From: Octopus bimaculoides
Lineage: Eukaryota
Assembly (NCBI RefSeq): GCF_001194135.2
Contig: NC_069010.1
Location: 2,428,597 to 2,492,596 of the forward strand
Reading direction: 5' to 3'
Length of the DNA: 64,000 nt
The position numbers and the translations under genes were made by a program. This document shows positions 4,213 through 56,450 of the stretch, piece after piece. The stretch's first letter is position 1, and each line of letters begins with the position of its first letter. The notes below the pieces were generated by a model, which worked only from the letters and a program-made list of their open reading frames with translations, searched no databases and was not told the DNA's origin.

Positions 4213-4820
4213 CCCACCTGACTGGCCTTCGTAGGATTTTCGAGCGAGATCATTGCCAGTGCCCCTGGACTGGCTCTTGTGCGGGTGGCACATAAAAGAC
4301 ACCATTTCGAGCGTGGCCGTTGCCAGTACCGCCTGACTGGCCTTCGTAGGATTTTCGAGCGAGATCATTGCCAGTGCCCCTGGACTGGCTCTTGTGCGGG
4401 TGGCACATNNNNNNNNNNNNNNNNNNNNNNNNNNNNNNNNNNNNNNNNNNNNNNNNNNNNNNNNNNNNNNNNNNNNNNNNNNNNNNNNNNNNNNNNNNNN
4501 NNNCCCACCTGACTGGCCTTCGTAGGATTTTCGAGCGAGATCATTGCCAGTGCCCCTGGACTGGCTCTTGTGCGGGTGGCACATAAAAGACACCATTTCG
4601 AGCGTGGCCGTTGCCAGTATCGCCTGACTGGCCTTCGTGCGGGTGACACGTAAAAGCACCTACTACACTCTCTGAGTGGTTGTTGTTAGGAAGGGCATCC
4701 AGCTGTAGAAACTCTGCCAAATTTAGATTGGAGCCTGGTGTTGCCATCCGGTTTCACCAGTCCTCAGTCAAATCTTCCAACCCATGCTAGCATGGAAAGC
4801 GGACGTTAAACGATGATGAA
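4213..4820 (+). mobile_element. Family B with 115-bp internal tandem units spanning a gap
   Basis: CCTGACTGGCC at 4217 and 4332; tail at about 4810. Confidence 0.8.
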
Positions 4821-9777: not shown

Positions 9778-10649
9778 AAGATAGGCTTAAATAATGAACA
9801 ATGCTAAAGATTACTATGGATAGTTTATTGAAACACGGGAGAATAATTTTGCCGCAAATATTTTAAGGTGTTCTGTTGTTACATAATGAAACAAGTATTT
9901 ATGCTTACATGCATAATATCTTTTGATTTTAAATTGTAATGCAAAGACGACGCGATGACCACTCTTATCTTTTATGATGAGATCTATGACGACCGTATAG
10001 TCCTTTCTTGGACCTGCAAACTATTGCAAGGGAGGGTCATGGCTGTGCGCGCGCGCAGTCACACTATGTAATGAGGTTAACATGAAGAAGGTCATCCAAC
10101 TGTTGAAATCCTGCCAAAAGTGGAACGGTCGAGTGGGACGTCCTCGACCCTTCAGACGAGGGTCGCAACTGTGAATAACTGGCCTGGTGCGTGACAACAC
10201 CTTTATTCCATGGCAGCATGGATATAGGACATAAAACGATGTCACACGCACGTTCCTCCCTCCACATATTCCTTGTCATAGACGTTTTAAATAAATACAC
10301 CGTCCCCCTGTCTTTGTTTCATTTCACCTAATTTGTGAATCTTTATTATAAACCTTATCTAGATTTCAGTTCACAAACGTACAGTTGTGTCTATTATATA
10401 TATATATACATACACAAGTATATATATATNNNNNNNNNNNNNNNNNNNNNNNNNNNNNNNNNNNNNNNNNNNNNNNNNNNNNNNNNNNNNNNNNNNNNNN
10501 NNNNNNNNNNNNNNNNNNNNNNNNNNNNNNNNNNNNNNNNNNNNNNNNNNNNNNNNNNNNNNNNNNNNNNNNNNNNNNNNNNNNNNNNNNNNNNNNNNNN
10601 NNNNNNNNNNNNNNNNNNNNNNNNNNNNNNNNNNNNNNNNNNNNNNNNN

Positions 10650-17963: not shown

Positions 17964-18517
17964 NNNNNNNNNNNNNNNNNNNNNNNNNNNNNNNNNNNNN
18001 NNNNNNNNNNNNNNNNNNNNNNNNNNNNNNNNNNNNNNNNNNNNNNNNNNNNNNNNNNNNNNNNNNNNNNNNNNNNNNNNNNNNNNNNNNNNNNNNNNNN
18101 NNNNNNNNNNNNNNNNNNNNNNNNNNNNNNNNNNNNNNNNNNNNNNNNNNNNNNNNNNNNNNNNNNNNNNNNNNNNNNNNNNNNNNNNNNNNNNNNNNNN
18201 NNNNNNNNNNNNNNNNNNNNNNNNNNNNNNNNNNNNNNNNNNNNNNNNNNNNNNNNNNNNNNNNNNNNNNNNNNNNNNNNNNNNNNNNNNNNNNNNNNNN
18301 NNNNNNNNNNNNNNNNNNNNNNNNNNNNNNNNNNNNNNNNNNNNNNNNNNNNNNNNNNNNNNNNNNNNNNNNNNNNNNNNNNNNNNNNNNNNNNNNNNNN
18401 NNNNNNNNNNNNNNNNNNNNNNNNNNNNNNNNNNNNNNNNNNNNNNNNNNNNNNNNNNNNNNNNNNNNNNNNNNNNNNNNNNNNNNNNNNNNNNNNNNNN
18501 NNNNNNNNNNNNNNNNN

Positions 18518-21420: not shown

Positions 21421-23463
21421 TTGACCACTGGTACTCTTTTTTGGTACTTGACCACTGGTACTCTTTTTGTTCTTTTATTAGTTTCAGTCATTGATTTGTG
21501 TTCATGTTCGGATATCACAATTTTAAGTGTTTTACTTGATTTATGGCAATTCCTATATTTTTTGTTTGTACCCATTTTATTAATTGTTATTAACTACTTA
21601 ATTCTGCTATTCTCTGAAGTTATGCACAAACATGACAGGCTTCTGTACAGTTTCTGGGTACTAAATGTCAGCACAAGGATTTGAACCCTTGAGAGAAGAC
21701 ACTCCAAAGTACAGAGAGATTGAATGGGAAACCTCATGGCTGCGAAGTTAACCACTTTTAATTGACAATTTATTTTTAAATCGTTGTAATATTGATTACT
21801 TTTTCCACAAAATTTATTGTTGGCAACAGTAGATGTTTACATATCTGTAGGGTTTGTTTTCCTGTAAAATCCCATGAATATGGAGAAGTTCATTGCCAGA
21901 TGACACCAGTTTTGCCAACAGCTTATTTTTTAGCTGTTGCTGTTGTTTCTGTAGTTCATCATCATTAATTTAACCTTAGGAAAGTTTTATTATTTATGTT
22001 TAAATACACTGCTTTGGATTCAATTATTAAAGCTGGTATTTGTAGCATATGTTCATGCTGATATATAACATGACATTTTGATGGTTTAAATTTAGATTAC
22101 TTTAAACCAGGAAGTTTGTATTTTAGAAGCAGGGTTAGGCTCAGGTGAGTTGGAATCAAAAAAGTTAAAGGGACTAGCTGTAGTCTCAAGCAAGGTGGTA
22201 TTAAATGAAACTTAGTAGTTTTATTATACAGCTTTTCCCCTTACCATCCCTAACAACAAACATTTCTGTGGTTGGATATGTTTTTGTGGCTGATTGCAAA
22301 AACAGTGGTTTGTTTTTATGCAGACATTTTCAAGACAGTCGGTTAACATGCACAGTGGACTTTCTACATTTTCTACCTACAAGTTCTTATAAGGCATTGG
22401 TCAGTCTCAGGCAAAACAGAAGGCCCCTCTTCACACTGCAATAGAAACACCTGAAACCATGTGGTTGTGATTATGGTTATGATTATTAACACTTATTTTG
22501 CTAATGAAATTTTGCCTGCCATTAGTATCATTTGATGTCTGTTTTATGTTGGGTTGGACTAGTCTTCTCCAAGTAAGGCATCTCTCCACTTGTTGCTGTC
22601 TTTTCTGACCTCCTTTGTGGAGTTCAGCATCTTTAAGTCAGTCAGCTTTCCCCACTTCTTTGGTTTTCCTCTTTGCTTTTGTCCCCCCCCCCCTTTTTTT
22701 TTTCTGTATTGGCCAGCTGTCATATATATATTACATGTCTGTTACCAGCACATCTAATTTCTTTTGTGTGTGTGTGTTCCAATGAATTTTGAACTCTGTC
22801 TGAACGAAATACTGCAAAGTGACTAGCTTGAATTGTGCCAAAGGTTGTTGTAATTGTAGACCCACCCATCCAATAATTTGAATTTAAAAATAATTATAAA
22901 TGAGGCGAATAAAATGACTGAAATAGGATTCAACTTTCTTTTTTAATATTTCTATTGAATAACATAGCTTTTATTTTACTTAATGTTGAAAATAAGGAAT
23001 TCAGTAAAATAACCTTGTCATTATTAAGTTGGTGTTTGGAACATATTTTAACATGAAATTTTGGAAGGTGTATTTTTCTTTAATTTGTATCACTTTAAAA
23101 ACAGGAACTTTATATCTTAAAACCAAGGTGTCAAAAAGTTTATGATATGTAATAGAAGGATTTGGAAACTGTCATATGGCTAAAATATTTCTATTTGAAC
23201 AGAAATTAACATGAAATTTTCAGTTCACTTTAAAATTGGAATTTTACTTCATAGAAGTAGAGTCAGTATTAGGTGATGGTGATTAATTTTGGGGAAAACA
23301 ATTTAGTTAGAAATCTTATAATTCTGCCATTGCTCCCCATCTTCTTTCTCCCCACCCCTCTCACCTCTTTCTGTCTCATATGCCAACTTTATTGTTAGAA
23401 ATCTTAACTAATTTCTGTTTTTTCTTTTCTATTTCAGCTTGAAAAATATTGCAATAAGCAGTG

Positions 23464-23517
23464 ATGGCCGACGATTTTGATGTTGAAGCTATGCTGGAAG
23501 CTCCTTATAGGAAAGAA
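23464..23517 (+). CDS. RBM39: RBM39/Caper-family splicing factor, first coding exon (exon 23438-23517; CDS MADDFDVEAMLEAPYRKE)
   Basis: The translation closely matches the RBM39/RBM23 N-terminus as I recall it (human RBM39 MADDIDIEAMLEAPYKK). Polypyrimidine tract plus TTTCAG acceptor ends at 23437, ATG is at 23464, and a phase-0 donor GAA|GTAAGC is at 23518. Confidence 0.93.
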
Positions 23518-24148
23518 GTAAGCATAATAATAATAATAATAATATCAAAGTAACGTTATATGTTAAAGCATACAGCTTGATGGCAGAAACTTAAAACTAC
23601 TTAAACAACAGGATATCCTTTCAAATAATGTCACAATTTTATTTTTTTATTAAGTAAATGTGTGCTCCAAAATCTACCTACCCAGCCTATAACGTATACA
23701 TACACATGCACACCCATGAAGTTTGTCATTGAAAAATTAAAATTCGACCTTCTTATCAGATGGTGGTGAGGGTTGGGTGGAAGTTGGTAGGGTCAGTATT
23801 GAATGTTCTGCACTACTTAACATTTTAATGATTTACTGGTCCAAATATCTCGGTTTTATGATGTGCAACTAGTAACTTAAGCCTATTCATTTTATAGTTT
23901 CCCTCTGCCCCACTAACTTTGAGGTCCCTTTATTTAGCATGTGTTGATAGTGTTTTTGTTGAGAGATCTTGTGATGACTCCCTTGGCTCAATTATTCATT
24001 GGTCTCTGTCACCTCATTCTGGGTGGATTTCAGCCCAGCTGTAGTAAATTACAAAATAACACAGTTGCTTGTTACCCAATAATAATCTGCTGTTGTTTAC
24101 AGCTGTGAACTGTACCTCCTTAGGGTACTTGTTTACAATTAGATAAAC

Positions 24149-24531
24149 TTAAATTCAAATTACGACAAACGTAAATAAACAAACGAAGTTTGCTTTTAGA
24201 AGCGTTGAGATGTCTTAGAAAGTTAAAGAAGTGATTTTTTAAATTCTCAATCGCAGAATAATGCTAATAATATAGCCTGAACAGGATAAACTACCCCTAT
24301 TTTGCAGAGAAAAGTATAGATGGCTAGCTGTGGACATGAACTCGCATCCCCGTGATTACGTGTCACGATGCTTTGACCGATTAAGCTAAACTACCCACTA
24401 CAAATTCCTCTGCAAATTTAAGCTATATAAATCTCGCTTTATGAGACGCTCTCATATGTTAAATTCAAATTACGACAAACATAAATAAACAAACGAAGTT
24501 TGCTTTTAGAAGCGTTGAGATGTCTTAGAAA
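24149..24531. repeat. 73-bp direct repeat pair (24149-24221 and 24459-24531), period 310 bp
   Basis: TTAAATTCAAATTACGACAAAC[G/A]TAAATAAACAAACGAAGTTTGCTTTTAGAAGCGTTGAGATGTCTTAGAAA occurs twice with one mismatch. Confidence 0.95.
24321..24396 (-). pseudogene. tRNA-like gene, probably a tRNA-Thr(CGT) pseudogene
   Basis: Minus strand reads GGGTAGTTTAGCTTAATCGGTCAAAGCATCGTGACACGTAATCACGGGGATGCGAGTTCATGTCCACAGCTAGCCA. D stem GCTT/AAGC, anticodon stem CGTGA/TCACG around CACGTAA, 6 of 7 acceptor pairs, TTTT 7 nt downstream. T stem is broken and U33 is replaced by A. Confidence 0.55.
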
Positions 24532-25706
24532 CTTAATTGTTGAATATTAGGGTATCTTTGCAGTGAATACTGTTGGTGTTGGAACACGATCTGTAGACAT
24601 TCTTTGACTAATAAACCTGCAGTACACTAGGCTAGCATACCATTTGAACTAGGAATTCTTTAAAAATGTTCAGTCACACTTGAAGTTGTTTGTGTATGAT
24701 AGTAGGATGTACTTAGTGTCTTAGTTGAACCTACAAGATCCATACATACATATACACTAGTTATAACTGTCTAAATGTCTTTATATTTACCAACTTCCTC
24801 TATTAATTTGCCAAAACTTTGAAATACTTTGGTCCTGTTTGAATATTTGTTGATAAAAAAAAAAAATCAATATCTGAGAATAATAGTTTTCCTCACTAGC
24901 TCCCTCTTCCACTCCAATGTTACCTCTGTTGATTGCTATCCTCTGAGCAATAGCCATGTATTAGTATTTCACATTTCAATTCTCAGATTCTAGATGTTCG
25001 TGCTTACTGAAAATATTAAATATCTGTTTGTGTGTGTGTATGTATGTATGTATGTATAAAATCTCTTACTATACTCAATATTATATCATTGATATGAACA
25101 TTAATGTCATAATAGTGCTCTAAATACATTGAGATAGAAATAATTAAAATATGTATGCAGTTGAACACCTAAAGAGCTTCTTTTTTTTTATCCCTAGTAC
25201 TCTGGATAATATTCTGAAAGTGTTACGGCACACTATCAGCTTTTGTTATATAAATATAAAGATTCCCCTTTGGTATTAATACTGCTTGTGTCACTATTTT
25301 TCTTTCTAATAAGCCTGTTGGCCTTTGGCAATGTCAGTGCCTAAAAAAATACTGAAGTTCTATAGTTGACACTGAGATTCAGCTGTTATACAAACCACTG
25401 CTGAAGAGACTAGGTAGGCTGAAATCACATGATCTGGCAGTTCTGATGTGTGTAACAGATGATTCTTGTCTGCCAATGATATAAATATAAGTGCTTTTAT
25501 GCACCAGGTGTCCAAGAGAAGTCTTCTCAGGGTAAACAATGCAGTATTTGGTGTTCTAACAAAATATCCACATAAAGTTGGATATCAAAATTGCCTTTTG
25601 GCATTAATACTGCTTCTGTCACTATTAATTACTGTATTACAATTGTTTTAAATCAGATGTGCACACCCATTGCATTTAGCTATAAAGGAATATGCATGCT
25701 CTAATG

Positions 25707-25853
25707 TAGTGGTTCCCCACCTTTTCACTATCAAGGACCCCTTTTATTTAAATGAGTTTTCCCATGGACCCCAGGATATTAAAAGGTCCGTCAGCTTAAC
25801 ATGTTCACGGACCCCCAGTACTACTTTTGTGGACCACAGGTTGGAAACCCCTG
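25707..25853. mobile_element. hAT (Charlie-like) MITE, 147 bp
   Basis: Imperfect TIRs TAGTGGTTCCCCACCT / AGGTTGGAAACCCCTG and an exact 8-bp TSD CTCTAATG (25699-25706, 25854-25861). Confidence 0.85.
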
Positions 25854-26805
25854 CTCTAATGTATGTGGGGCATTTGGACAAGTTTTCTAAATGTTCTGAT
25901 ATTTCTGACTTCTCTCAAAAGTTGGTGGCATACTTGCAGGCCATACAGAGCATCCATGACCTGCTAGAAATGTTATTTTTAGCAGGTTGTGTACTCTATA
26001 GAAATCTTCTCCGAGCATATGGTGGTTATAGTTATATTTATCTTCAAGGTCTGCCTTGACTGATCAGATGATGAGACTAATTTTTAATGAGAGTGTGAGG
26101 TAGGTCTGTCATGAGTCCTAGGACCCATAGGGCTGGAGTTTAACCAGGTTTCCATAATGTAAAAAGGTGTTTGAAATTACTAAACTCTCCCACTGAATGG
26201 GACACTGGTTTGTTGTAGAGTCAACTTCCCAGCTATTACTGGAACTCATTTACAACTGAGTGGACTGGAGCAACATGAAATGAAGTGCTTTGCTCAAGAA
26301 CACAATGCATTATTCGAGAATTGAACCACAATCTTATGATCATGAGTGCAATACCTTAACCACTGGGTCATGCACTTTCACAACAAGAGTGTGGGTGAGA
26401 TGTAAAGGAAATTTGGTTGCTACTTCTAGCTAGTCAGAGAACCATGTAATGGATTGGGTTAACTGATGAGTGGCCATGGTTTTTGAGAATTCAGTGAATT
26501 TATGTGTGATAGCAAACAGTTGGGATCCAAGACATGTGCCATCATACCATTGTCTGATTTGTTCCACCCTGATCACTCAACCATAAGGTTAACTAAATTT
26601 ATATACATTATTGCTTATCTTTTTTTGTGCCTTTTAGAGCCAGACACCATAATGTATACTTAGGTCTCTTAACATGTATACTTGTAGTTCGTTATGTTGT
26701 TTGAGTGGATTCAGCTAAATGATTGTTTTTCTGGATGAACATAAATGGTTTCTGACACAGGTAGATTCCTCTGTTGCATTGTAGGTGAATATCTTCTATA
26801 GCCTC

Positions 26806-27315
26806 ATCATCATCATCGTTTAACGTCCGCTTTCCATGCTAGCATGGGTTAGATGATTTGACTGAGGACTGGTGAAACTGGATGGCAACACCAGGCTCCA
26901 ATCTGATTTGGCAGAGTTTCTACAGCTGGATGCCCTTCCTAATGCCAACCACTCAGAGAGTGTAGTGGGTGCTTTTACGTGTCACCCGCACGAAGGCCAG
27001 TCAGGCGGTACTGGCAACGGCCACACTCAAAATGGTGTATTTTATGTGCCACCCGCACAAGAGCCAGTCCAGGGGCACTGGCAACAACCTCGCTCGAAAG
27101 TCCTTACACATGCCGCGGGCACAAGTGCCAGAAAGGTGATGCTGGGCACAGGTGACATCACAATTTCGCTTTCGCTTGCCCCAATAAGTCTTCGCAAGCT
27201 GAGTTTCGTGTCTAATGAAGGAGACGATGTTGGCATGGGTGCCAGTCGTCAAATTTAACTCGATTTCGATTTCACTTGCCTCAACAGGTCTTCGCAAGTG
27301 GAGTTTAGTGTCCAA
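26806..27315 (-). mobile_element. Family B, long reverse copy
   Basis: Reverse complement of 44362-44860. The repeated flank TAGGTGAATATCTTCTATAGCCTCA at about 26782 and 27317 may be a target duplication. Confidence 0.9.
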
Positions 27316-27806
27316 GTAGGTGAATATCTTCTATAGCCTCAGGCTGACAAATATCATGTGCATGAAATTTAGTGAACAAAGGCTAATGTGGAAGTGTTTT
27401 GTGTATGATTTTAGTCTTTGGACCATGCACATGTACATACACACAGGCCTGAAACCTGTCTTTGTTTAAATATAGACACACCTTAATTAAATATTCAAAT
27501 GACTGCAGTTACATTTTAACTGTATACAGCTTGTCTATTAATTAATGAATACTAGCAGGATCTGTGAAAATTCTACAGTGCAAGTCTATATTTGAAAATA
27601 TGTTATTGTACAAGCAAAGAATTTCAAAAAGTTGTTCTGATATCCTGCCCTTTAATCAAAACTGTACTTTAAAATATAACTGAAATAGACTTAAAAGGTA
27701 TTGATTATTTTCCTTCTTTTAATATTTTGACAGATATTATGTACTTTTTAGTTTAAGGAAATAAAAGCTGAATTAAATTGATAAAACTTATTTGTATATT
27801 TGTATA

Positions 27807-27844
<38 letters not shown>

Positions 27845-28395
27845 GCTGCCCACCCAACACCAAAGCTCAGTTATTTACCAATTGAGATTATTTTCCTTTC
27901 TTTTCAGTTCAGTTCAGCTACATATCTACTTGTGTATTTATTAATGTATGTCTCTATCTGTTGACATATCTGTAGACTCACCTGTGTGCTTACCTGTCTA
28001 TCAAAAGAAAATGTAGATATGATAGTTATCTAACTAGCTCGTCAACTATCCTATCTGCATTCTCTTCTGTATTTGTCTACTCTCATAATACCAATAAATA
28101 TTTAAACTAAATAACACCAAAAAAAAAAAAAAAAAAAAAAGAAATGGTTACACCTCAGCATTTGGTTAGGAACATGTAAAAGATAAATTTGTAACATCCA
28201 CAGCTATTGGCTAAAGTTATTTCACTTTAACTATTTATCAATATATCTTGTGTGTGCGTAAATTAATAAATTTTCATGACATTGTTTTGCTATGTTAGAC
28301 ATTTTGACTGTACCTGCAATTTGAACACACAAATGTAGAATAATGGAAACCTTCTCTTCTGTTTGTTTCTCTGTCTCAGTTTCCCCCCTCTCTCT

Positions 28396-28447
<52 letters not shown>

Positions 28448-28544
28448 TCCTTCTTTACATCAACATTGTTATATGTATAGCATTATTGTCATTTTATGTC
28501 TGCTTTACTTGCTTGTTATGAATTGCCTTATTCAAAGTTAGTGG

Positions 28545-28765
28545 GAGTCATTTTGCCTTAACCGATGTTATCCAAGGGAGCGGTAAAGGCTGATACAGCT
28601 TGGCACCAGTGATGTCGCAACTCATTTCTACAGCTGAATGAACAAGAGCAATGTGAAATAAAATGTCTTGCTCGAGAACACAGCCCAGTCCATGAATTGA
28701 ACTCACTACCTCATGATTGTGAGCCTGACACTCTAACCACTGAGCCATGCATCTTCACCCATTAT
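28545..28765 (-). mobile_element. tRNA-headed SINE of a further family
   Basis: Minus strand GCATGGCTCAGTGGTTAGAGTGTCAGGCTCACAATCATGAGGTAGTGAGTTCAATTC followed by GAGCAAGACATTTTATTTCACATTGCTC. Confidence 0.7.
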
Positions 28766-30430
28766 ACTAAGCCCACTTTATTTTCCTATTTTATCTGCCT
28801 TGAGCCCTATAGACCCATAAAGTTGGAACTTATTCAAGTTTACTGTGTTTAGGTTGAGTGTATAAGACTTTCCCTCAAACAGGACACTAGGCCTTCACAG
28901 GATTAAGTCCTTGGTGCCACTGGTACTCATTATCAGCTGAGTATAATAGTGTGTAATGAAGTGTCTTTGTTAAGTACACAATGCACCATCTTTCCAAGAA
29001 TTGAACTCTTAACCTAATGATTGCGAGTTCAACACCCAAACTAGTAGGCCATACATTTTCATATTTTCTCTAGATAGCTTAAAATTAGAACTTATCATGG
29101 AAAAGCAAACAGCAGCTAAATTCATTTTCACATATATTACAGCTTAGTTTTCAATACAAAATAATAAATGCATAACAGTTACTATTTGTGTGTATTTCAG
29201 AATATTCCAGCCTCTGTTACAAATGCAGGAGGACAATGGGGATTTTTTTTGTTTTAAACTGCATTGGGTTTATGTTTATGAATCTTTTACATACATACAT
29301 ACATTTATATATATATATATATGAGAGAGAAAGAGAGAGAAATAATATATGTATGTGCATTAATATCCAGATCATTTTAAATTGTTGAGTTGCTTGTGAG
29401 ATCTTTGTAACCCTTTTGTTAACACATTTCTGTTGAAAAACAACCTTTGTTTCAATTAATTTTGGAACTAATGACAAATTTAGTAGACTATGCCATTGTT
29501 AAACTGGTATTGAAATTTTGATAGACAATTTTAGATCACTTTTAAATAAGGAATTTATAGAACAAAGGGCAGTTGTGTGTAGGTTAACATCAAAAGGATT
29601 AAATTGTTTTCAATGGAATCTAACCCGAGATAGTGTTGTTTAGTCCCAGATCAGCATGAATTAGTAGTAATGTTGGTGAATGGCATTCTAACTGTGATAT
29701 CCCATTCATTTTTGTATATCTACAACTATGTCTGCTATTTCTGGCAAGTTGAGTGATCACACAATGACTCTTGTTGAATTGTAATCTGTTTATTATAAAA
29801 AAAAAAAAAAAAAATTTTTTAAATGCTATGGAAGGAGCAAAATGATATAATTGTTGGTGTTTCTGAAGTTACATTAACATGATTATACATAGAGTATGTC
29901 AACATAATGTATGTAACCTAGATAGTGTGTGTACACATACACAACTTTTTCTAACCAACAACTTTTTTTCCCTCCTTCACTCGCCCTCTTCTACCTAGCT
30001 CCCACCACCATCATAATCCAGGGCTTGCCATGTAAATATACAGAAACCTGTAGTCACATGTGGTAGGCGTGATGGGGGGTAAACTAAACCCTTGAGGGTG
30101 TCACTTCAACATGGCCACAGTCCAGTGACTGAAACCAGTAAAAGAATAATCTCTCAAACATACATTGTTTTTCAGGGATGTAATGAACTTATATTGTTGA
30201 CCCTTAGAAGGAGAAAAAAAATAAAATCTTAACTGTATCAGTGTTGGAACTTCCAAGTGGGATATAAAATACTGCAAAGAATTAATTTCGTTTGTTTGTT
30301 GTATGATTTTGCTGGGTTGGATGTCGAGTAAGTTTTAATGGAAGCCAGTCTTTTTTTTATATATTTTATTATGGCTAAGAGGGCTTTCAAGATTGATGAG
30401 AAGAAGGGAATTGTTCATGGGAGGAAGGGC

Positions 30431-30997
30431 GGATCTTTTTTAAAACGGGGGCCACATTTTTCATTAATGTTTTACGTAGTGTTTTTGGTACTGAAAGACT
30501 TTCAAACTTCGTATACTTATCTATTTTGTGTTATAGAACAGAAAAATATTTTTGTATTCAAATTTATTTCATGTAAAAAATTGTCTTACTTCGATAATTT
30601 CAACCAATCACTGACAAGTATTCAGTTGTTTACATTTACTCCTTGGCTGATTAAGCGATGTAAAGCGTATTTAATCTCCATACCTTCGTTTTATTTGCTT
30701 TTTTCATTTTAAATTTGCTTTAACCCTAACCCTAACCCTAGAGTTAGGGTTAGGGTTAATTGTTTCAGAATCGTTTGTTTATGTAGTCGGCACTTAATGT
30801 ATATCGGCTGAATGGACGTCAGTGATTGATTGAAATTACAGAAATACGACAACTTTAACATGGAATAATTTATGGATTTCTTTTTTTTTTAAGAAGACTA
30901 AGAGAAAAAGATGTTTTATATGACACATTCTACCAGTGTTCCAAGTTTCAAAGTGTTTCGTTAATGAAAAATGTGGCCCCCGTTTTAAAAAAGATCC
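30431..30997. mobile_element. Non-autonomous DNA transposon, 567 bp, Merlin-like termini
   Basis: Perfect 37-bp TIR GGATCTTTTTTAAAACGGGGGCCACATTTTTCATTAA (30431-30467, 30961-30997) and 8-bp TSD GGAAGGGC/GGAAGGAC. The superfamily call rests only on the 5'-GG ends and TSD length. Confidence 0.8.
30720..30759. repeat. Inverted telomere-type repeat: (TAACCC)3 facing (TTAGGG)2
   Basis: 16-bp arms TTAACCCTAACCCTAA / TTAGGGTTAGGGTTAA with an 8-nt spacer. Confidence 0.9.
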
Positions 30998-31475
30998 GGA
31001 AGGACAGTACCAGTAGCCCTTTTCAAGGCCTCAAAAACTGATGGGAGGAAGGAAGTTATCAAACTGGAGATCTGGCATGAATGCATGCAAAATATTGGAC
31101 AGTGTTACAAGTACCAAAGAGCCAGGTGGCAAGAAACTGTCTCTTTGACAGACTTCCATACAGTTTCCCTTTTACTAGATTTTACTCATTAGACTTTGGG
31201 CTTTGCAGGAGATAGTTGCTGTGGAAGCAAACCTAAAGCTACATAGTTATAAAGCGAACAACTTAAATATACTTGAATTTATCCCAGTGTTCCCTCACGA
31301 TCACCCACTCTTTTTTGTTTTGTTTTTGTATACCTTGTCTGTTGAGGACTACATCTATATTCTTCCCCATTTTTGAAAGATGGCAGGGTGTGTTTTGGGA
31401 TATTTAGCTGTTATTTATAGCAGGTTGATGAACTGCTGTTACAGTCTTTCATTGAGTTAGTAATTAAGTAGACAT

Positions 31476-31754
31476 CAGTGGTTCCCAAAGTGGATGGTAC
31501 TTCCCCGCCCCTGGGGGTAGTGAACAGATTGGAGTGGGTTGAGTTGAAGAAAAGTGGAGTGATAATGGGGGTGGCCAAAAGGGGGCGATGGATGTAACAA
31601 CAACAAAATAATGGGTTAATTAGGTTATTTTATTTGTGAAAAACAGTTGTTGAATTTGCTGTGTCTGTGGTTGTCAGTGTGGGAGTGGATGTTCTCTAGG
31701 AATGTGTCTCGGGTGCTAAGGAGGAAGCAGCTTGTAAAAGTTTGGGAACCATTA
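31476..31754. mobile_element. Older hAT-type MITE
   Basis: TIRs CAGTGGTTCCCAAA / TTTGGGAACCATTA; degenerate 8-bp TSD GTAGACAT/GTATATAT. Confidence 0.7.
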
Positions 31755-32616
31755 GTATATATCTCTTAACCATATAATTTGTTAATTCTCCCCTTCTCAT
31801 TCTATACAAAGATGATAGTTAAACCTGACTCTGGTAAGGAATTTGAAACGGATAAAATTAAAAAGATACTAAAAGTGCATTTTAATCTTCTGTGTTCTCT
31901 TGGCCATCTTCACTGTTGTAGACTAATTAATAATGATAATGATGATAATAATGATAATAATAAATACAGTGACTGAAGTTCAAGTAATTTTTAATTCTTT
32001 TTTCAGATGTTATTCAACGTTGGAGTGTAGTTAATACTGCGAGTGATGATATTCACATACACAGCTCTTTACCACCAACTGCTTACTGTTTTTGTTTGAA
32101 ATTGCCCCATTCCCTTTTTTTTTTTTATCTATTTGTGTTCCTGTTTGTTTTCTATTCATTCAGATGACCCCCCCCCCATGTAATCCCATTGTTACATACA
32201 TGCATTCACACATGCAATCTATTTGCTTGTTTTAAACAATTTGGTTTAATTATATATATNNNNNNNNNNNNNNNNNNNNNNNNNNNNNNNNNNNNNNNNN
32301 NNNNNNNNNNNNNNNNNNNNNNNNNNNNNNNNNNNNNNNNNNNNTATATATATATATATAAAATGTACACACACACACACACACACACATATATTTATAT
32401 ATATATATATATATATAGTAATTAATGATAATGTGCTTTTGAAACAAAAATAAACAAAACTATAAAATAAAGAGACATAGAACTGTACCTTTTCAATTGA
32501 GGACCATTAGCTGCCAACCCAACCCTTTATTTTGGAACCATTAACCCCAGCTCTTCTGCCTCTCTCTCCTTTGTTCCTTCCATTTCACAAGTTGTTCAGT
32601 TTCTCTAATTTTGCAG

Positions 32617-32637
32617 ATGCAGGTAAAACAAAAAAAG
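32617..32637 (+). CDS. Candidate 21-nt in-frame microexon of RBM39 (MQVKQKK); an internal donor at 32623 would give a 6-nt form (MQ)
   Basis: CU-rich tract, CTAAT and TTTTGCAG acceptor; consensus donor AAG|GTAAGT at 32638; length divisible by 3 and open in phase 0. Confidence 0.55.
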
Positions 32638-32690
32638 GTAAGTATGTTACTAATAGCCAATCTGATATATTTGTTCCAATTATTTCTTAG

Positions 32691-32758
32691 CAGTTCTCTC
32701 TATTCACTGTCAAAGTTCTGCTTCTGCTTTGAGCAGGGCTGGTATCATAACCAATGAG
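32691..32758 (+). other. Candidate poison (stop-containing) cassette exon in RBM39 intron 2
   Basis: Branch-like TACTAAT at 32648-32654, TTTCTTAG|CAG tandem acceptor (32691 or 32694), in-frame TGA at 32730-32732, donor GAG|GTATAT at 32759. Confidence 0.4.
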
Positions 32759-33584
32759 GTATATCCGAGCTGTGCTTATTGCGATTAGTTACAGATGTTG
32801 ACATTTGTGCTGTAGGAGGTGTCTATTTATCCACTTCTTTCTTGATGTAATTGTCTTTAAATGTGTTACACTACAATCTGAAGTTGATAAATTAAGCTTT
32901 ATTATTTTGTCTTCAGAGTGAAGTCTTTGAAGAAAATTCTATCCTAGAATATAGTAAAAGTTAATTTGTTAGTTAAGTTTTAGCAGTTCTTATCTAGTTG
33001 GGAATGGTTGGTTTGTACAGATTTACCTTCAAGATAGAAACTTGTTACTTGTAACTTTGCAGTCTTTATCTTGCTTTTGGTTGTTTTAAATAGGTTATCC
33101 ATGTTGGATATCTTTGTCACTGTTATCTCCAGTATTGAGTTTCTGATAATTTTCTTCACATTGGATTTGATTCTATATCTTTTTTTTTTTTTATTATGTC
33201 TTATTTTCCATAGTTTCTCTTTTGATGTGATCTTAATGTAAATTTGAAATTTTTGTTATATTTCCTATCTGCTTCTGCTGTTAACTGTTTTTTTTTTTTT
33301 TGTTGTAAAACATTTTGTGTATATATGTATAAAGGAAACCGAAAGTCTTGCTACTGTTTAATATATTTGTGTGTATTAAGTGGTAGCATGACCTTTTGGA
33401 CTGTTCAGTCTATATATATGTGTGTGTGTGTATGGATACAGACATTCAGCAGCTGGATTTAGTTACTTCGGTACAATTTTAGTGGAGTAGGGAGTCCAAT
33501 TGATCCAACAACTGGAGTATTCTTTGTTGAAACTACTGGAGATCCATTTTGTGTGTTTGTTTATACACACACACACATATAGAC

Positions 33585-33740
33585 ATGGCTGTGTGGTAAA
33601 AAGTTTCCTTCCCAATCACACAGCTTCAGGTTTAGTTCCACTGTGTGGTGCCTTGGGTATGTGCCTATGTACCTTCTATAGCTCCAAGCCAACCAAAGAT
33701 CTATGTGGTCTTGGTAGAGGGAAACTGAAAAGAATCTATC

Positions 33741-33803
<63 letters not shown>

Positions 33804-33870
33804 CTGTTGGCGTGTGCACGTTTGTGCATGTTACTATCTCTTTGACTTGACGTTGTATGATAGTTGTAAA
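33585..33870 (+). mobile_element. SINE family A, diverged copy
   Basis: Degenerate head and central domain. Confidence 0.65.
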
Positions 33871-35454
33871 CAAGTATTACTGTCATACAAATGGTGCCCT
33901 TTATTTTCAATCTTCTTGAAAAACCTGTCTGGCCATGAAGAAATATTACTGTAGTTGGAAACAGGTGAGGGTTAGTAACAGGAAAGGTAGCTAGTCATAG
34001 AAAATCCACATCAATAAATTCTGTCCAACCAAGATGATCCTGGAAAAGTGGATGTTAAAATGATGGTGATAGACATTCTATTTCCATTTATCTGTTGCTG
34101 AACCACTGTAAGATGAAGTATCAGCTAGCCATTGCTGGTTAATCTATGTTGGTTGTTAGGCCTGTTTGTTCATGCTGGCTGGTCAGAACATTAGTCCTGG
34201 CTGTTGACAACTTGGTGGAATTTGGACCTAGAACACGAAGAGCTGCAACAGTTATTGTTCAGGTAACTGGTCTACTGCTCTGTCAAACCACTTTATTTTT
34301 CAACTGTGAGTGAATAAAAGATCTCAGTGAGTATAGAATTAAGAACATAGAGAATTGGAATGAATATTTTAAGGTGAGCCGTCCAGTGCTCCTGAAGACT
34401 CTGTCCATTCCCTATCTTGTTTGTGTGTGTGGTTGAGGTTAAGAAATTTGCTTTGAGACCATGTGGTTTTGGGTTGTAACTTACTACATGGTACCTTGGG
34501 CATGTCTTCTCTTATAACACTAGACTAACCTATGCTTTGTAACTAAGTTTGGAAAATGGAAACTGTATGGAAGCTGCCAGCATGTGTATGTCTTTCTGTA
34601 ACTTGTCTTATATTAACACCATTAGCCATTTGACACCTGGTGTTGATTTGTATAAGTCCTTGATACTGGAGTTGGACTTAAACTCTTTGAGGCCATACTC
34701 CAGCATGGCCATAGTCCAATAACTGAAAGCAGTAGAAATGTGTGTGTGTGTACTGGGCACAGGTGTGGCCAAGTGTTTTAAGAAGTTGGTTTTGTTGTCA
34801 TTAGGTTCCAGATTTGATGTCAGTGTGACATCTTGGCAAGGGTTTCTCACCATAGTTTGTAGTGTATCCCTAGCAAAAATCTGTATGGAAGCTTGTCAGA
34901 TGGACTATAATTGTAATTCATGGAGCCAGCCTCTGATTCCTCCATCTGATTTACTTCAAAGTCTTAAAATCCTGTGGAATACTTTGCCAGTTATAGACAT
35001 GATAGTTAAGATGATGGAACTGTTGAAATAAATGTCATTTCTCTTATATACCCTTGTTTAATATTTATATTCCAGTAAAATGTGGCTTAAAATGTGACCA
35101 TTTATTATGCTATGTATACTGAATGGTATGTTTTACCGGAATTTTTGCAACTTGGGGTTCAGTTCAACATTCCACTCTTATGTCCTTGTATTATCAAAGC
35201 AAGGACAGACACTATTATGAAAAAGAGTTGCATAATATCAAAATAAAGACAAAACCACATTTTGATATTTCAAATGTATTTAATACACTTGTTTCTGATA
35301 ATTATGCAAGATAATCCTTACAGAATATTATCTTCTTCAGTCAAATATTTCAAAATATTTTGAAATATTTTACTGAAGAAGGTAGTATTATGTAAGTATT
35401 AACTTCTGTAACTACTAGAAACTTGTATTAAATGTATTCCAAATATCAACATAT

Positions 35455-35494
<40 letters not shown>

Positions 35495-37463
35495 TTCGCA
35501 TTTAGCCTACTCAACTTGGAAGTCCTTGGTCGCTTTAGTATATATTAAATATAATTTTTCCTCTTCATAAGGTAGTTTTGTTTTTACTTGTTGTTGCTGT
35601 TTTTTTCACCCTCCCCCTTCAGTAAATTTTAGCGTCATAAATTCTAAAAGTCAAGATTTTCTACTTAAGATTTATCATCATAAACATCATTTAAATTGAT
35701 TATCTATAAGATAATTTAAATATCCAGGATTTAATATTTTCTAATTGTCTTCTAAGCTATTTTTTAATGCTTTCATTTCAATCATTTTGCTTAAAGACCA
35801 TATTAAAATATTTTGCTGTCTTGTGACAGTTTTTTTTTTTTATTTTTAGTTTTATTCCCTCCTCCCACCTTTTTTTGTGCGCATTCTATTATTGATAAAC
35901 ATTTACATTTCTTTTCATAGAATAATTGAATGAAACATGAATTCTGAAGTGACAGACCAAGGGAATTTCCAAATTGGTTTGATTAATTTATCTACTCAGT
36001 GTTCAGTAATATTTTAATCCTTGCTGTTTTTGCAATGCCAGCTCCGGCCATATTTCAATCTGAAACTGAATCTTACGTGCCTGCTCTCTCTCTTCATGTT
36101 GGGATTAAGAAACTGAATTGCAGAATTGATACCAGGAAAATAAATATGTTGAAAGCAAGCATTAGAGAGAAAATAAGATAAATCACTCAACAATCAAATG
36201 CTGGTTCCTTGATATTTAGTTAGTTTTTACTAATTAATTAATTCCCAGATATGATATCTAGAATTTGCCACTCTCTTGTGTGTGGTGCTAGCACCATCAG
36301 CAACAGAATGATGAAGTATTAGTGAAACACTAATGAAATATAATTATTCTGCTACATCTTGGTGTCTGACTGACCACCAGAATAAATCTGTTATTGGTTG
36401 TAGGCATGACTGGGAAAGAAGTTTTCCTTGGCAGCCACATCATTCTTGATTAGATCTCTCTGCTAGGTACTTTGGACTAGTGCCTTCTGTGGTCTTTGGA
36501 TGATCAGCCACTACCTTGTAAGTGAAATTTTGCAGAGGGTAACTCTGTGAAAGTTGTGTTAGTTTGTGTGTGATTGATGCAGATATTGCTGTGTGGTTTA
36601 CAACTTTTGGGTTCAGTCACCCTACAAAATACCTTGGGCAAATACCTTGTAGAACCTGAGTTGACCAAAGTCTTGGAAGATGTTAACTGAAAGATAGTTG
36701 TGTGTAAAATATGCACTCATATACACACATGTTGTCATATTGGCAGTGTTGTTCTCAGTTTTCCTGTCAAATTGTCTGCTTGCTTCATTCTTTTAAAGCC
36801 ATGTAGAATAAGGAATTTCAACAGTTAAAGTAGAACAAGAAGAAGGTCTTCTACTCTAAAACAACACCTCAATAATATGTTCATCTAACCCATGCAAGCA
36901 TGGAAAATGAAAGGCTGTGTGTGTGTGTGTGTTTATGCATGCATGCATGTTTCATGCATTTGTATAACTTTTGCTGATGTTGGTATACAATGGCAAGAAA
37001 ATTGAAGTGATAATTTTTGACCCATGTTCCTTGAGATATTTGTTCTCTACAGAGACAGTAAATCATTGAATGGCTTGTCGGAAATATGTAACCAGTGGCA
37101 TCATTGTTAACCACTTAATATAAAATAGGACTGTTGTCCAAACAGATCTAATTTGGTTGGTGGAGACATGTCTTAACAAAACTGACATGGGCCATTTGAA
37201 GAACAATCTGTTTCTTATTTAGCAGTCACTTAGGTCTAGTAGCTAATCTTTTGGCTATTTCTTCAATCTATTTTCATCTTTATTGTAGCACAGACTTGTT
37301 CTTGTGTGTAGTGTGTAAAAGAGATTTGTGAAGTGCACATGAGGTTAATAATCTGCAGAAATCTTACTGTTCTTATTAAATATTCTAGTCATTTCAAAAA
37401 CTGTCTAGGAGCCAGCATGTTATAATATAACATAGCATACATGCATGTCTGCGTGTGTGTCTA

Positions 37464-37529
<66 letters not shown>

Positions 37530-37870
37530 TACACGCATACATACATATATATATGTTTACAAATACACACACACACTCCCAACCACAAGCACTGATACAG
37601 GAGATTATAAGTTTCCAATGCTAGTTACAGAACACTTTACTCTCTCTCTCTCTCTCTCCCTCACTGTCTTTCCATCTTTCCAACTTCCCAAAGCCAGCTG
37701 TGATCAGCCAGAATGCAGCTCCAGATAACAACAAGGATATTCTTTTCAGCACTGTATAGCGTTTGTTTCCGAAGAACTAACAACCGTTCCTCTTTCATCT
37801 TTTTCAACTTGACCTAAGCTGAAGAATTTTTACTATTTTGGTCTTTTTTGTTTTGTTTCTGTTTTTCTAG

Positions 37871-37914
37871 GATGACGTCGTCAAAACTGATGGAAGAGCT
37901 GACAAAGAGAGAAG
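37871..37914 (+). CDS. RBM39: RBM39 second coding exon, 44 nt (DDVVKTDGRADKER + AG), phase 0 to phase 2
   Basis: Long T-rich tract ending TTTCTAG at 37870, donor AAG|GTAGGT at 37915, and open in the frame left by the 23517 donor. Size and phases match my recollection of the short exon after the ATG exon in vertebrate RBM39. Confidence 0.8.
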
Positions 37915-38146: not shown

Positions 38147-39958
38147 CCTTTTACTGAAGCTAGATGTAAGATATTGTTATTTGAACCTTGATTGTTTGGT
38201 AACAATAGTACCTGGTGACAGGATTTTGGTTGAGAAAGTTAGGGTCTTGGGATTTGTGAAGTTTAATTTTTGGTTTTTGATACACCTTCCCTTGTTAACT
38301 TTGTAGAATCTGTAGGGACTGATCCTCAATGTATGGCACAAAATGATCTACTGGGGGCCAGTATTTAACATATTAGATGTAATGATCTACTGAAAGTTGT
38401 GCTCAATATATTGCTCAAGTCCACATGGCTCAGTGCTCAACATAGGGTTCATAATGAGGTCTATGGATCATTATGGCTCGTTATGATCCACTACTCAACA
38501 CATGGCCTCCCTGGGAAGTTTGTCCCTTGATCCTTTCAGTTGCACTTCTCTGTTACATGTAGCCCCGGGTCGATAAATTAAGTACCAGTTGTGTACTGGA
38601 GTCGATTTAATCGACTGACCCCTCCCCTTAAAATTTCAGGCCTTGTGCCTAGAATAGAAAAGAATATTATTGACAATGTTGATACAAGCAGTTTTATGGG
38701 GTCCGCATTGAAAACTATAACATTGAATTTTCTTAGTGGTTGAGATTGGATGTTGTTCTGTTGGATACCTTTCACAAGAACACAAGTGAAATGGTGTCAG
38801 GTGGGGAATGAAACCCAGTCAGAGCCTGGTTGAACAAGAATGTGCTTCCCTTAGAATTACTGAAGTATTTCTCATGGTAGCACCTCTGCTGAGTGCTTCT
38901 CCATTTACAAGCCAATGAGGGAGCCTCTGCGTGGGTGCTTGACTTGCTAGAAATAGTTGAAATATATCCCTCAAATCACACATAACTGGAAGAGGATATA
39001 TTAGATTATGACGTTCCTGATATACCCAGAAACAATAGTCATGACTGGAAAGCTTTTAATCATTCCATCAGGCTAAATTAGCTGTGTGGCTTCTGTAATT
39101 ACTTAATATATTTTAGATCTGGAAGGGATGTAAAGCTTTGAAGGGACACTTTGTATACACAGTGATTTAGGTTGGCTGTAACCTTAGAAATGGTCCTTCA
39201 ATGGGAAATGGGTACAAGAAGTGACCAGTGTGATCTTTAGAGGTAGATTTGTTAAGGGCAAACAAATTGTAACTAAATGGTATTGGTATTGAGGACAGTA
39301 TTGTTTCTGGTGGAGCCATAGTGGTTGTCTAACCTGAGGTCAGCTCTGACCCAGCAATTGTATCCCAGCCATGACCTCATCTTTTGAATTAAGACAGTAG
39401 GCTACATAATCCTGTGTAGTACATCAAAGAGAAATGTAGCTGCTATTTCTAGCTAATGGCTTCAGAAATAGTCCTTGTTATGTCCTCTGTTGTTTGGTTG
39501 GCAGTCAGCTGCTTTGTGGAATTGGCCTGATTCTAGTGAATGCCATTGAAACGGAAGTTGTGATGTTACCCTAGAGAAACTCAGCCAAGCTTAGGAGATA
39601 TTGGTTTTTATAGTTGGGTTTGAAAATTGAAAAGATTTTTTGCTCTAGACCTTTCACGACTGTATCTAATGAAATATGCTTGTTTTATGTTGCAATAAAT
39701 TTAGAAAATAGAAAATTTAAAGGGTTAGTAAAGTGACTGTTTTTTTTCATTATGAAGTTGGAGTGTGGAAAATACAGGTACTGTAAATTCCTCCATTAAG
39801 TTATAACACAAGGTTCTAAATAATGTATAAACATTTTAAGATAGACATTTTTGTATCATAGAAGCAGTGGTGATTTTGGATGGGCTGGTATCAAAAGAGT
39901 TGCAAAATATAAGCATAATAACAATTTAACAAAATTGAAGGTTTGGGGCTTGCAAAGG

Positions 39959-44361: not shown

Positions 44362-44860
44362 TTGACCTCGCTTGCGAAGACCTATTGAGGCAAGTGAAAT
44401 CGAAACCGAACTAAATTCGACGACTGGCACCCATTGCCAATGTCATCTCCTTCATTGGACACGAAACTCAGCTTGCGAAGATTTATTGGGGCAAGTGAAA
44501 GCGAAATCGGGATGGCACCTGTGCCCAGCGTCGCCTTTCTGGCACTCGTGCCTGTGGCATGTGTACGGACCTTCGAGTGAGTTCGTTGCCAGTGCCCCTG
44601 GACTGGCTCTTGTGCGGGTGGCACATAAAATACACCATTTTGAGCGTGGCCATTGCCAGTACCGCCTGACTGGCCTTTGTGCCGGTGACACGTAAAAGCA
44701 CCCACTACACTCTCTGAGTGGTTGGCGTTAGGAAGGGCATCGAGCTGTAGAAACTCTGCCAAATCAGATTGGAGCCTGGTGTTGCCATCTGGTTTCACCA
44801 GTCCTCAGTCAAATCGTCCAACCCATGCTAGCATGGAAAGCGGACGTTAAACGATGATTA
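44362..44860 (+). mobile_element. Family B, long young copy nested in RTE
   Basis: Intact with CpGs retained. Confidence 0.9.
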
Positions 44861-50723: not shown

Positions 50724-51132
50724 NNNNNNNNNNNNNNNNNNNNNNNNNNNNNNNNNNNNNNNNNNNNNNNNNNNNNNNNNNNNNNNNNNNNNNNNNNNNN
50801 NNNNNNNNNNNNNNNNNNNNNNNNNNNNNNNNNNNNNNNNNNNNNNNNNNNNNNNNNNNNNNNNNNNNNNNNNNNNNNNNNNNNNNNNNNNNNNNNNNNN
50901 NNNNNNNNNNNNNNNNNNNNNNNNNNNNNNNNNNNNNNNNNNNNNNNNNNNNNNNNNNNNNNNNNNNNNNNNNNNNNNNNNNNNNNNNNNNNNNNNNNNN
51001 NNNNNNNNNNNNNNNNNNNNNNNNNNNNNNNNNNNNNNNNNNNNNNNNNNNNNNNNNNNNNNNNNNNNNNNNNNNNNNNNNNNNNNNNNNNNNNNNNNNN
51101 NNNNNNNNNNNNNNNNNNNNNNNNNNNNNNNN

Positions 51133-55279: not shown

Positions 55280-56450
<1,171 letters not shown>

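What the first reader, a model, noticed from the sequence alone, without database searches (positions are those of the whole stretch)
32617..32637. Predicted 21-nt (or 6-nt) microexon inserting MQVKQKK after the conserved RBM39 N-terminal motif
Seen: consensus acceptor and donor, frame-preserving, preceded by a CU-rich tract (about 32550-32610) in repeat-poor DNA. Established: neural microexons in bilaterians are promoted by SRRM3/4-type eMIC proteins through UGC near the 3' splice site and repressed by PTBP on CU tracts. Inference: a tissue-regulated, lysine-rich insertion in a core splicing factor that I do not recall from vertebrate RBM39.
Basis: partly seen in the sequence, partly recalled or inferred. 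Interest (0 to 1): 0.7.

Follow-up and report, generated by a model that had tools for sequence, protein, structure and literature searches.

The report
Unverified candidate microexon in octopus RBM39
A 21-base stretch inside a 14-kb intron of the octopus RBM39 splicing-factor gene looks like a tiny in-frame exon, but no transcript or cross-species evidence could be found, so it remains a prediction and is more likely an unused look-alike than a real exon.

Summary
The window holds the 5' part of octopus (O. bimaculoides-type) RBM39. Coding exon A ends at 23517 (…EAPYRKE) and exon B starts at 37871 (DDVVKTDGRADKERR). At 32617-32637 an AG acceptor and a perfect AAG|GTAAGT donor flank 21 nt that would add MQVKQKK in frame. 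By home-made splice-site matrices it is the best short in-frame candidate in the intron and in the whole window. Chance expectation is about 0.003-0.02 per intron from simulations and about 0.05-0.15 from real DNA.

The O. bimaculoides UniRef fragment and one other cephalopod mRNA contig join exon A directly to exon B. No database protein carries the insertion. No octopod genomic or RNA contigs were reachable, so neither inclusion nor conservation could be checked.

The architecture only partly fits eMIC-type microexons. The UGC and the UCUC tract are present. However, two upstream AGs break the AG-exclusion zone and would give frame-breaking 38- or 46-nt exons.

Other molluscs do have alternative exons at this junction, but these are unrelated in sequence.

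My estimates: unused pseudo-exon about 0.55; genuine coding microexon about 0.28; stop-introducing variant about 0.1.

The parts
23438..23517 (+). RBM39 exon A. The acceptor is tttctatttcag|CTTGAA, the ATG is at 23464, it encodes MADDFDVEAMLEAPYRKE, and the donor is GAA|gtaagc.
   Evidence: sequence. (tblastn with human RBM39, 78% identity). (exact match to O. bimaculoides A0A0L8G0I0). (the 5'UTR of L001 shares cttgaa at the exon start). It ranks 3rd in the exon-like scan.
23518..37870 (+). The 14,353-nt intron between exon A and exon B that hosts the candidate. It lies at, or one codon from, the position of the human intron that carries poison exon 2b.
   Evidence: PMC10477243 places exon 2b between exons 2 and 3. 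The fish exon-A read-through ORFs end ...YRK|VG.
32551..32588 (+). CU-rich tract (34 of 38 pyrimidines) containing UCUU and CUCUCUC motifs.
   Evidence: Only 4 such tracts lie on the + strand and 1 on the - strand. Two of the others sit 60-240 nt upstream of exon A and exon B. With relaxed thresholds, further purely intronic tracts appear.
32590..32599 (+). Two competing upstream AGs: cacaAG at 32590-91 and ttcAG at 32598-99. Paired with the 32638 donor they would give a 46-nt (frameshift) or a 38-nt (in-frame TAA) exon.
32605..32609 (+). CTAAT, a branch-point-like CUAAY motif. Its A at 32608 is only 8 nt from the acceptor AG at 32615-16 and 14 nt from the AG at 32621-22.
   Evidence: This is a motif match only.
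32612..32616 (+). UGCAG: a UGC motif directly abutting the proposed acceptor AG.
   Evidence: The acceptor score of 8.4 is within the top 1.6% of AG sites. The bipartite UCUC..UGC arrangement occurs at 5% of AG sites by chance.
32617..32637 (+). Candidate 21-nt cassette ATGCAGGTAAAACAAAAAAAG (MQVKQKK). The sub-variants are 6 nt (32617-32622, MQ) and 15 nt (32623-32637, VKQKK).
   Evidence: There is no RNA evidence.
32638..32643 (+). GTAAGT donor, preceded by AAG. This is the only AGGTAAGT in the window.
   Evidence: The donor score of 12.1 places it among the top 6 of 7678 GT sites.
37871..37914 (+). RBM39 exon B, encoding DDVVKTDGRADKERR and ending 2 nt into a codon. The acceptor is ttttctag| and the donor is AG|gtaggt. 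The next exon (RRKSRSSS...) is not in the window.
   Evidence: It ranks 1st in the exon-like scan.

Best explanation
The 21-nt stretch is most likely an intronic pseudo-exon. It is a chance, though unusually good, pairing of a 3'-splice-site-like and a perfect 5'-splice-site-like sequence inside the 14.3-kb first coding intron of octopus RBM39. On this reading it is not spliced into mRNA at meaningful levels, and the normal mRNA joins 23517 directly to 37871.

Shown: the gene, the exon borders, the motif arrangement and how rare it is.

Inferred: non-use. The inference rests on four things. Real microexons are rare per intron. Very short exons are skipped by default unless they have a dedicated enhancer architecture. 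That architecture is only partly present here. The only available transcripts skip the stretch.
For: - The O. bimaculoides protein fragment P0001 and the cephalopod mRNA contig L001 join ...RKE directly to DD....
- Among the 42 proteins returned with the microexon-containing query, none has an insertion at this junction.
- Real-DNA null: about 0.05-0.15 equally good in-frame decoys are expected per 14 kb. With a prior of roughly 1-3% that a given intron holds an alternative microexon (my estimate from general knowledge), decoys are not outnumbered.
- AGs at 32590-91 and 32598-99 break the AG-exclusion zone, and the only CUAAY is 8 nt from the acceptor.
- There is no notable RNA structure (z = +0.9).
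- There is no similar candidate in the orthologous intron of four other invertebrate RBM39 loci.
Against: - It is the top-ranked short in-frame candidate of the whole window.
- Markov simulations give only 0.3-2%.
- In a general exon-like scan the two known exons rank 1st and 3rd and this candidate ranks 4th-5th.
- A rare CU-rich tract sits just upstream, as it does for exons A and B.
- UGC and UCUC motifs are present.
- The DNA is non-repetitive.
- Other molluscs do use alternative exons at exactly this junction, which raises the prior for this intron.
- Annotation pipelines and assemblers often miss microexons, so the skipping transcripts are weak evidence.
Confidence: 0.55

Rival explanations
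1. It is a genuine alternative coding microexon. In some cells, most plausibly neurons expressing the eMIC isoform of Srrm234, the UGC-bearing 3' splice site at 32616/32617 and the perfect 5' splice site at 32637/32638 are used. This inserts MQVKQKK (or MQ, or VKQKK) between the conserved N-terminal motif and the RS region of RBM39. Elsewhere the exon is skipped, possibly with help from PTB bound to the CU tract.
For: - Joint splice-site strength is rare.
- All three AG/GT combinations that use 32617 or 32623 are in frame and free of stops.
- It has a UGC next to the AG, UCUC motifs and a CU-rich tract. These match part of the cis code described for eMIC exons in flies and mammals (bioRxiv 10.1101/2021.02.24.432780; 10.1101/2024.09.17.613571).
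- Babylonia areolata isoform X2 (P0087) carries an in-frame 19-aa insertion at the same junction. The protein therefore tolerates insertions there.
Against: - There is no RNA or conservation evidence.
- The AG-exclusion zone is absent.
- The 3' splice site is not weak, unlike typical eMIC exons.
- The exon is A-rich low-complexity sequence.
- The bipartite motif occurs at 5% of AG sites by chance.
Confidence: 0.28
2. It is an unproductive (stop-introducing) cassette that uses the strong 32638 donor with an upstream acceptor. Using 32592 gives 46 nt and a frameshift. Using 32600 gives 38 nt and an in-frame TAA. A further option is the 32617 acceptor with the weak 32759 donor, giving 142 nt with a TGA at 32755-57. 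Any of these would act as an NMD-coupled autoregulatory exon like vertebrate RBM39 exon 2b.
For: - Human RBM39 has poison exon 2b in the equivalent intron, controlled at its 3' splice site by a UUUG-containing site (PMC10477243).
- A Mytilus-like bivalve mRNA (L009) carries a 144-nt stop-containing exon exactly at the exon A/exon B junction.
- L001 and L009 also carry frame-breaking inserts after exon B.
- The CU tract lies directly upstream of the 32592 and 32600 acceptors, and UUUG motifs lie at 32570 and 32610.
Against: - The upstream acceptors score lower (4.6 and 3.5) than 32617 (8.4).
- No N(G/U)NUUUG match lies within 32480-32660.
- The bivalve exon has no similarity to this region (within the null range) or to anything else in the intron.
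- The cephalopod contig L001 has its inserts in the next intron, not this one.
Confidence: 0.1
3. It is a recursive-splicing site in a long intron. The juxtaposed CAG|GTAAAA at 32622/32623 would act as a ratchet point, and the 32638 donor would define a transient 15-nt RS-exon.
For: An AG|GT juxtaposition is followed 15 nt later by a perfect donor, in a 14-kb intron.
Against: - The 5' splice site regenerated after joining exon A (GAA|GTAAAA) is weak, about 2 bits by my hand calculation with the same matrix.
- It would lose to the much stronger downstream donor, so the exon would be retained rather than removed.
- The pyrimidine tract directly before 32622 is interrupted.
Confidence: 0.03

Closest known systems
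eMIC (SRRM3/4, Srrm234)-dependent neural microexons of bilaterians
   Same: The length is 21 nt (27 nt or less, divisible by 3). It has a UGC adjacent to the 3' splice site, a UCUC-rich pyrimidine tract upstream and a very strong 5' splice site as in mammalian microexons. The inserted residues would be charged.
   Different: There is no AG-exclusion zone: AGs lie at -18 and -26. The CUAAY is too close to the AG. The host is a core splicing factor rather than a typical neuronal trafficking or signalling gene. No expression or conservation data exist.
Human RBM39 poison exon 2b (autoregulatory, NMD-coupled; PMC10477243)
   Same: It lies in the same, or a one-codon-shifted, intron after the MADD..EAPY exon. 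A UUUG lies immediately before the acceptor (UUUUG-CAG here, CUCUUUG-AG in human).
   Different: The 21-nt form has no stop and preserves the frame. No N(G/U)NUUUG consensus match is present. No inhibitory stem-loop is predicted. The human exon is longer.
Alternative exons at the exon A/exon B junction in other molluscs (L009 bivalve 144-nt exon; Babylonia areolata isoform X2 19-aa insert)
   Same: They sit at exactly the same junction, and all three begin with an ATG codon.
   Different: There is no detectable sequence similarity to the octopus region. The lengths differ (144 and 57 nt against 21 nt). The bivalve exon carries a stop.
Intronic pseudo-exons (decoy splice-site pairs)
   Same: It is an isolated pair of consensus-like sites deep in a long intron without transcript support.
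   Different: The site quality is better than any other decoy in the 128 kb scanned here, and a rare CU tract accompanies it.

Membership tests
eMIC-dependent neural microexon | Very short cassette (27 nt or less, or 51 nt or less) that preserves the reading frame | tested here: met
   21 nt, open frame, flanked by codon-boundary junctions.
eMIC-dependent neural microexon | UGC motif close upstream of the 3' splice site, with UCUC-rich pyrimidine tract | tested here: met
   UGC at 32612-14; UCUC at 32602-06 and 32560-68. The same arrangement occurs at 5% of all AG sites.
eMIC-dependent neural microexon | Long AG-exclusion zone with a distal strong branch point | tested here: not met
   AGs at 32549, 32590 and 32598 lie within 70 nt upstream. 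The only CUAAY (32605-09) is 8 nt from the AG.
eMIC-dependent neural microexon | Inclusion in neural tissue, dependent on Srrm234/eMIC | not testable with these tools
   No octopus RNA-seq was reachable. P0001 and L001 skip the stretch.
eMIC-dependent neural microexon | Conservation of the exon and flanking intron among related species | not testable with these tools
   No octopod genomic contigs were found. Four distant invertebrate loci have no comparable candidate.
RBM39 autoregulatory poison exon | Cassette in the intron after the N-terminal coding exon | tested here: met
   Position is as in human exon 2b (PMC10477243) and as in bivalve L009.
RBM39 autoregulatory poison exon | Introduces a premature stop or frameshift | tested here: not met
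   The 21-, 15- and 6-nt forms are in frame without a stop. Only the lower-scoring acceptors at 32592 and 32600 would break the frame.
RBM39 autoregulatory poison exon | RRM2 site N(G/U)NUUUG at the 3' splice site | tested here: not met
   No match lies within 32480-32660. AAUUUUG and UCCUUUG each miss at position 2.
Recursive splice site / RS-exon | Pyrimidine tract followed by AG|GTRAGU, regenerating a usable 5' splice site | tested here: inconclusive
   CAG|GTAAAA at 32622/23. The regenerated GAA|GTAAAA is weak, and the tract is interrupted.

The most novel reading that the evidence does not exclude
A cephalopod-lineage coding microexon, possibly neural and eMIC-dependent, adds a lysine-rich heptapeptide directly after the conserved N-terminal motif of the core splicing factor RBM39. 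It would lie in the same intron that carries NMD-coupled poison exons in vertebrates and a bivalve. That would make this intron a recurrent hotspot for alternative exons, used here for a protein variant rather than for dosage control.
Probability: 0.2. Interest if true: 0.5.

Novelty: not a real feature. Interest (0 to 1): 0.3.

Why it matters
If real, it would be a tissue-specific protein variant of an essential spliceosome-associated factor in an animal known for heavy neural RNA diversification. It would also show that the intron hosting RBM39's autoregulatory exon in vertebrates is reused for a different purpose in cephalopods.

If it is a decoy, as I think more likely, it is a useful caution: a perfect donor, a good acceptor, a CU tract and a UGC can coincide in a long AT-rich intron.

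Whichever reading holds, one side observation stands on its own. Mollusc RBM39 mRNAs carry frame-breaking inserts around the first coding exons, which suggests that unproductive splicing of this gene predates vertebrates.

Tried and rejected
1. Protein database search with the microexon-containing peptide found only exon-A read-through ORFs and three spliced forms, none with the insertion.
2. A search with concatenated intronic ORFs flanking the candidate, meant to fish out orthologous octopod contigs, scored nothing.
3. Exact look-ups of window ORFs were not on record.
4. A metagenome DNA scan for the 31-mer gave 0 hits.
5. A search with the C-terminal part of cephalopod RBM39 returned O. bimaculoides only as a split UniRef model, P0044. 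The one extra cephalopod contig, L008, starts inside an intron and is uninformative.
6. The look-up of Babylonia P0087 was not on record.
7. Homology between the bivalve 144-nt exon and the octopus region or intron was rejected: the alignment score lies within the shuffle null and there are no BLAST hits.
8. A homologue of the L001 77-nt insert was not found in the window.
9. No Rfam family was matched, no tandem or dispersed repeat covers the candidate, and there is no significant RNA structure.
10. The RBM39 RRM2 consensus at the acceptor is absent.
11. Literature searches (RBM39+microexon, octopus+microexon, RBM39+cephalopod, SRR5253657) found nothing on this exon. The one octopus tissue-splicing preprint has no supplements held.

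Full report
**What is in the window**

The + strand carries the 5' part of an octopus RBM39 (Caper) gene. Exon A runs from an acceptor at 23438 through the ATG at 23464 to 23517. It encodes MADDFDVEAMLEAPYRKE and is followed by gtaagc. A human RBM39 probe finds it at 78% identity. Exon B is 37871-37914 (DDVVKTDGRADKERR, donor gtaggt).

Exons A and B match the O. bimaculoides UniRef fragment A0A0L8G0I0 (P0001) residue for residue. The fragment's third exon (RRKSRSSSRSRSTSPVKHRR) is not in the window, so the following intron exceeds 26 kb. The many sized N gaps fit a scaffolded short-read assembly. That last point is my inference.

**The observation**

The coordinates are right. The sequence ttctctaattttgcag|ATGCAGGTAAAACAAAAAAAG|gtaagt places a 21-nt open frame (MQVKQKK) at 32617-32637, between two codon-boundary junctions. 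The internal CAG|gtaaaa gives the 6-nt alternative.

The CU-rich tract is real at 32551-32588 (34 of 38 pyrimidines). The 28 nt between it and the acceptor are mixed and contain AGs at 32590-91 and 32598-99.

The DNA around the candidate is unique within the window. The only repeats nearby are a (TA)n microsatellite and an assembly gap about 270 nt upstream.

**Is it more than chance?**

I scored sites with position matrices typed from general knowledge of metazoan splice sites. They were not trained on octopus, which is a caveat throughout.

- The donor (12.1 bits) is among the best 6 of 7678 GT sites in the window. The acceptor (8.4 bits) is among the best 116 of 7193 AG sites.
- Among 553 in-frame, stop-free AG..GT candidates of 3-51 nt in the intron it ranks first. 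Among 4612 in the window on both strands it is the only one reaching both scores.
- Markov simulations of the intron (orders 1-3, 1500 runs each) reach both scores in 0.3% of runs and the summed score in about 2%.
- Real DNA is less forgiving. In 289 kb of strand length (window plus four invertebrate RBM39 loci) one other candidate reaches a sum of 20.4 or more and three reach 20.0 or more. That gives about 0.05-0.15 expected per 14 kb.
- A perfect AGGTAAGT alone is expected 2.5 times per window.
- As a check on the matrices, a general exon-like scan of 20-64 kb ranks exon B first and exon A third. The candidate ranks fourth to fifth.
- CU tracts as strong as the one upstream occur only four times on the + strand. 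Two of the others lie 60-240 nt upstream of exons A and B. Relaxed thresholds add several purely intronic ones.

The pattern is therefore real and moderately unusual.

**Evidence on use**

None is positive.

- P0001 and the only cephalopod mRNA contig covering the junction both join ...RKE to DD... directly. That contig is L001, a Logan assembly of SRR5253657. Its exon A is 84% identical in DNA, so it is not an Octopus; it is probably a decapodiform, which is my inference.
- The search with the microexon-containing peptide returned 42 proteins, and none has an insertion there.
- I could not reach any octopod genomic or RNA contigs. Exact look-ups of three window ORFs, a search with concatenated flanking ORFs and a metagenome DNA scan all came back empty.
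- A search with the C-terminal half of the protein found O. bimaculoides only as a second, split UniRef model (P0044). It also found one more cephalopod contig, which starts inside an intron.
- In four invertebrate genomic loci with compact RBM39 genes, the orthologous intron holds no comparable candidate.

**Architecture compared with known microexons**

eMIC-dependent exons are described as having four features: UGC near the 3' splice site, UCUC-rich pyrimidine tracts, strong CUAAY branch points and long AG-exclusion zones (bioRxiv 10.1101/2021.02.24.432780). A bipartite UCUC..UGC enhancer is also described (bioRxiv 10.1101/2024.09.17.613571).

- The candidate has the UGC (32612-14) and the UCUC motifs. 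That combination occurs at 5% of all AG sites here.
- The AG-exclusion zone is absent.
- The only CUAAY (32605-09) is 8 nt from the acceptor AG.
- If the branch point lies upstream of the CU tract, the AGs at 32590-91 or 32598-99 would be met first. They would give 46-nt (frameshift) or 38-nt (TAA) exons.

Which acceptor would be used cannot be decided from sequence.

**Context that raises the prior**

This intron is a known site of alternative exons elsewhere.

- Human RBM39 autoregulates through poison exon 2b, which lies between exons 2 and 3. Its 3' splice site is selected by RRM2 binding to CUCUUUG (PMC10477243).
- A Mytilus-like bivalve mRNA (L009) carries a 144-nt stop-containing exon exactly between exon A and exon B, plus a 63-nt insert after exon B.
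- Babylonia areolata isoform X2 has a 19-aa in-frame insertion at the same junction, and Elysia has a 5-aa one.
- L001 has 77-nt and 44-nt frame-breaking inserts after exon B and the next exon.

None of these is similar in sequence to the octopus candidate or to anything else in its intron. No N(G/U)NUUUG match lies near it.

**Weighing**

I took a prior of about 1-3% that a given long intron holds an alternative microexon; this is my estimate. I raised it for this intron because of the points above. Decoy expectations are 0.003-0.15 depending on the null. The CU tract and UGC give modest extra support, and the skipping transcripts are weakly negative.

My estimates are:
- about 0.55 that the stretch is not meaningfully used;
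- about 0.28 that it is a real in-frame microexon;
- about 0.1 that the locus yields a stop-introducing exon through another acceptor or donor;
- a few percent for recursive splicing.

These are judgments, not computed posteriors.

**Verdict**

The interpretation cannot be decided with the data reachable here. If real, it would be a new member of a known kind (a lineage-specific microexon) and of moderate interest because of its host gene and position. As it stands it is a well-formed prediction without support. Microexon-aware junction mapping of existing O. bimaculoides RNA-seq and an alignment of Octopus genomes would settle it.

Noticed in passing
L001 175-251 and 313-356; L009 138-281 and 332-394: Mollusc RBM39 mRNA contigs carry frame-breaking inserts near the 5' end. 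L001 (cephalopod) has 77 nt after exon B and 44 nt after the next exon. L009 (Mytilus-like bivalve) has a 144-nt stop-containing exon between exons A and B and 63 nt after exon B. The post-exon-B inserts both start with GTG and end with CAG, as expected for use of a downstream alternative 5' splice site. This suggests NMD-coupled unproductive splicing of RBM39 outside vertebrates.
   Followed up: partly
P0087 (Babylonia areolata isoform X2), P0081 (Elysia marginata), P0068 (Aplysia X2): Babylonia has a 19-aa in-frame insertion (MSTVTCTVYQHPGLTTMKE) and Elysia a 5-aa one (VHSSR), both exactly after ...EAPY(K/M)KE. The Babylonia insert and the L009 insert both start with Met and share a loose C-T-x-[YF]-x-H-P pattern; I did not test this statistically. 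The Aplysia X2 N-terminus (MNLMLKLCLRLH...) looks like a +1-frame reading of the conserved first coding exon, which is my inference.
   Followed up: no
window 37915-64000: The next RBM39 exon (RRKSRSSSRSRSTSPVKHRR) is absent from the window, so the intron after exon B is longer than 26 kb. Read-through of exon B's donor hits a stop at once (AGA AGG TAG).
   Followed up: yes
window 56054-56168, 38640-38800, 21955-22144, 25198-25413: These are other exon-like AG..GT pairs with summed scores (19-22) close to those of the known exons. The pair at 21955-22144 ends in CAG|GTGAGT and lies upstream of exon A, so it could be a 5'UTR exon. The others could be alternative or poison exons, or decoys.
   Followed up: no
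window 2262-2714 (+), 26872-27258 (+), 44382-44798 (-): A dispersed repeat family whose copies share an ORF beginning M(K/A)..DGNTRLQSDLAEFLQLDALPNANHSESV.... It is probably an octopus interspersed element. One copy lies in the intron studied.
   Followed up: no
window 4409-4503, 10430-10649, 17964-18517, 32260-32344, 50724-51132, 54297-54488 and three 10-N gaps: Assembly gaps of estimated size, often flanked by microsatellites. The gap at 32260-32344 is about 270 nt upstream of the candidate, so sequence there is missing.
   Followed up: no
window 23330-23379 and 37633-37682: Strong CU-rich tracts lie 60-110 nt upstream of exon A and 190-240 nt upstream of exon B. Together with the tracts at 32551-32588 and 22655-22710, they are the only four of that strength on the + strand.
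   Followed up: partly
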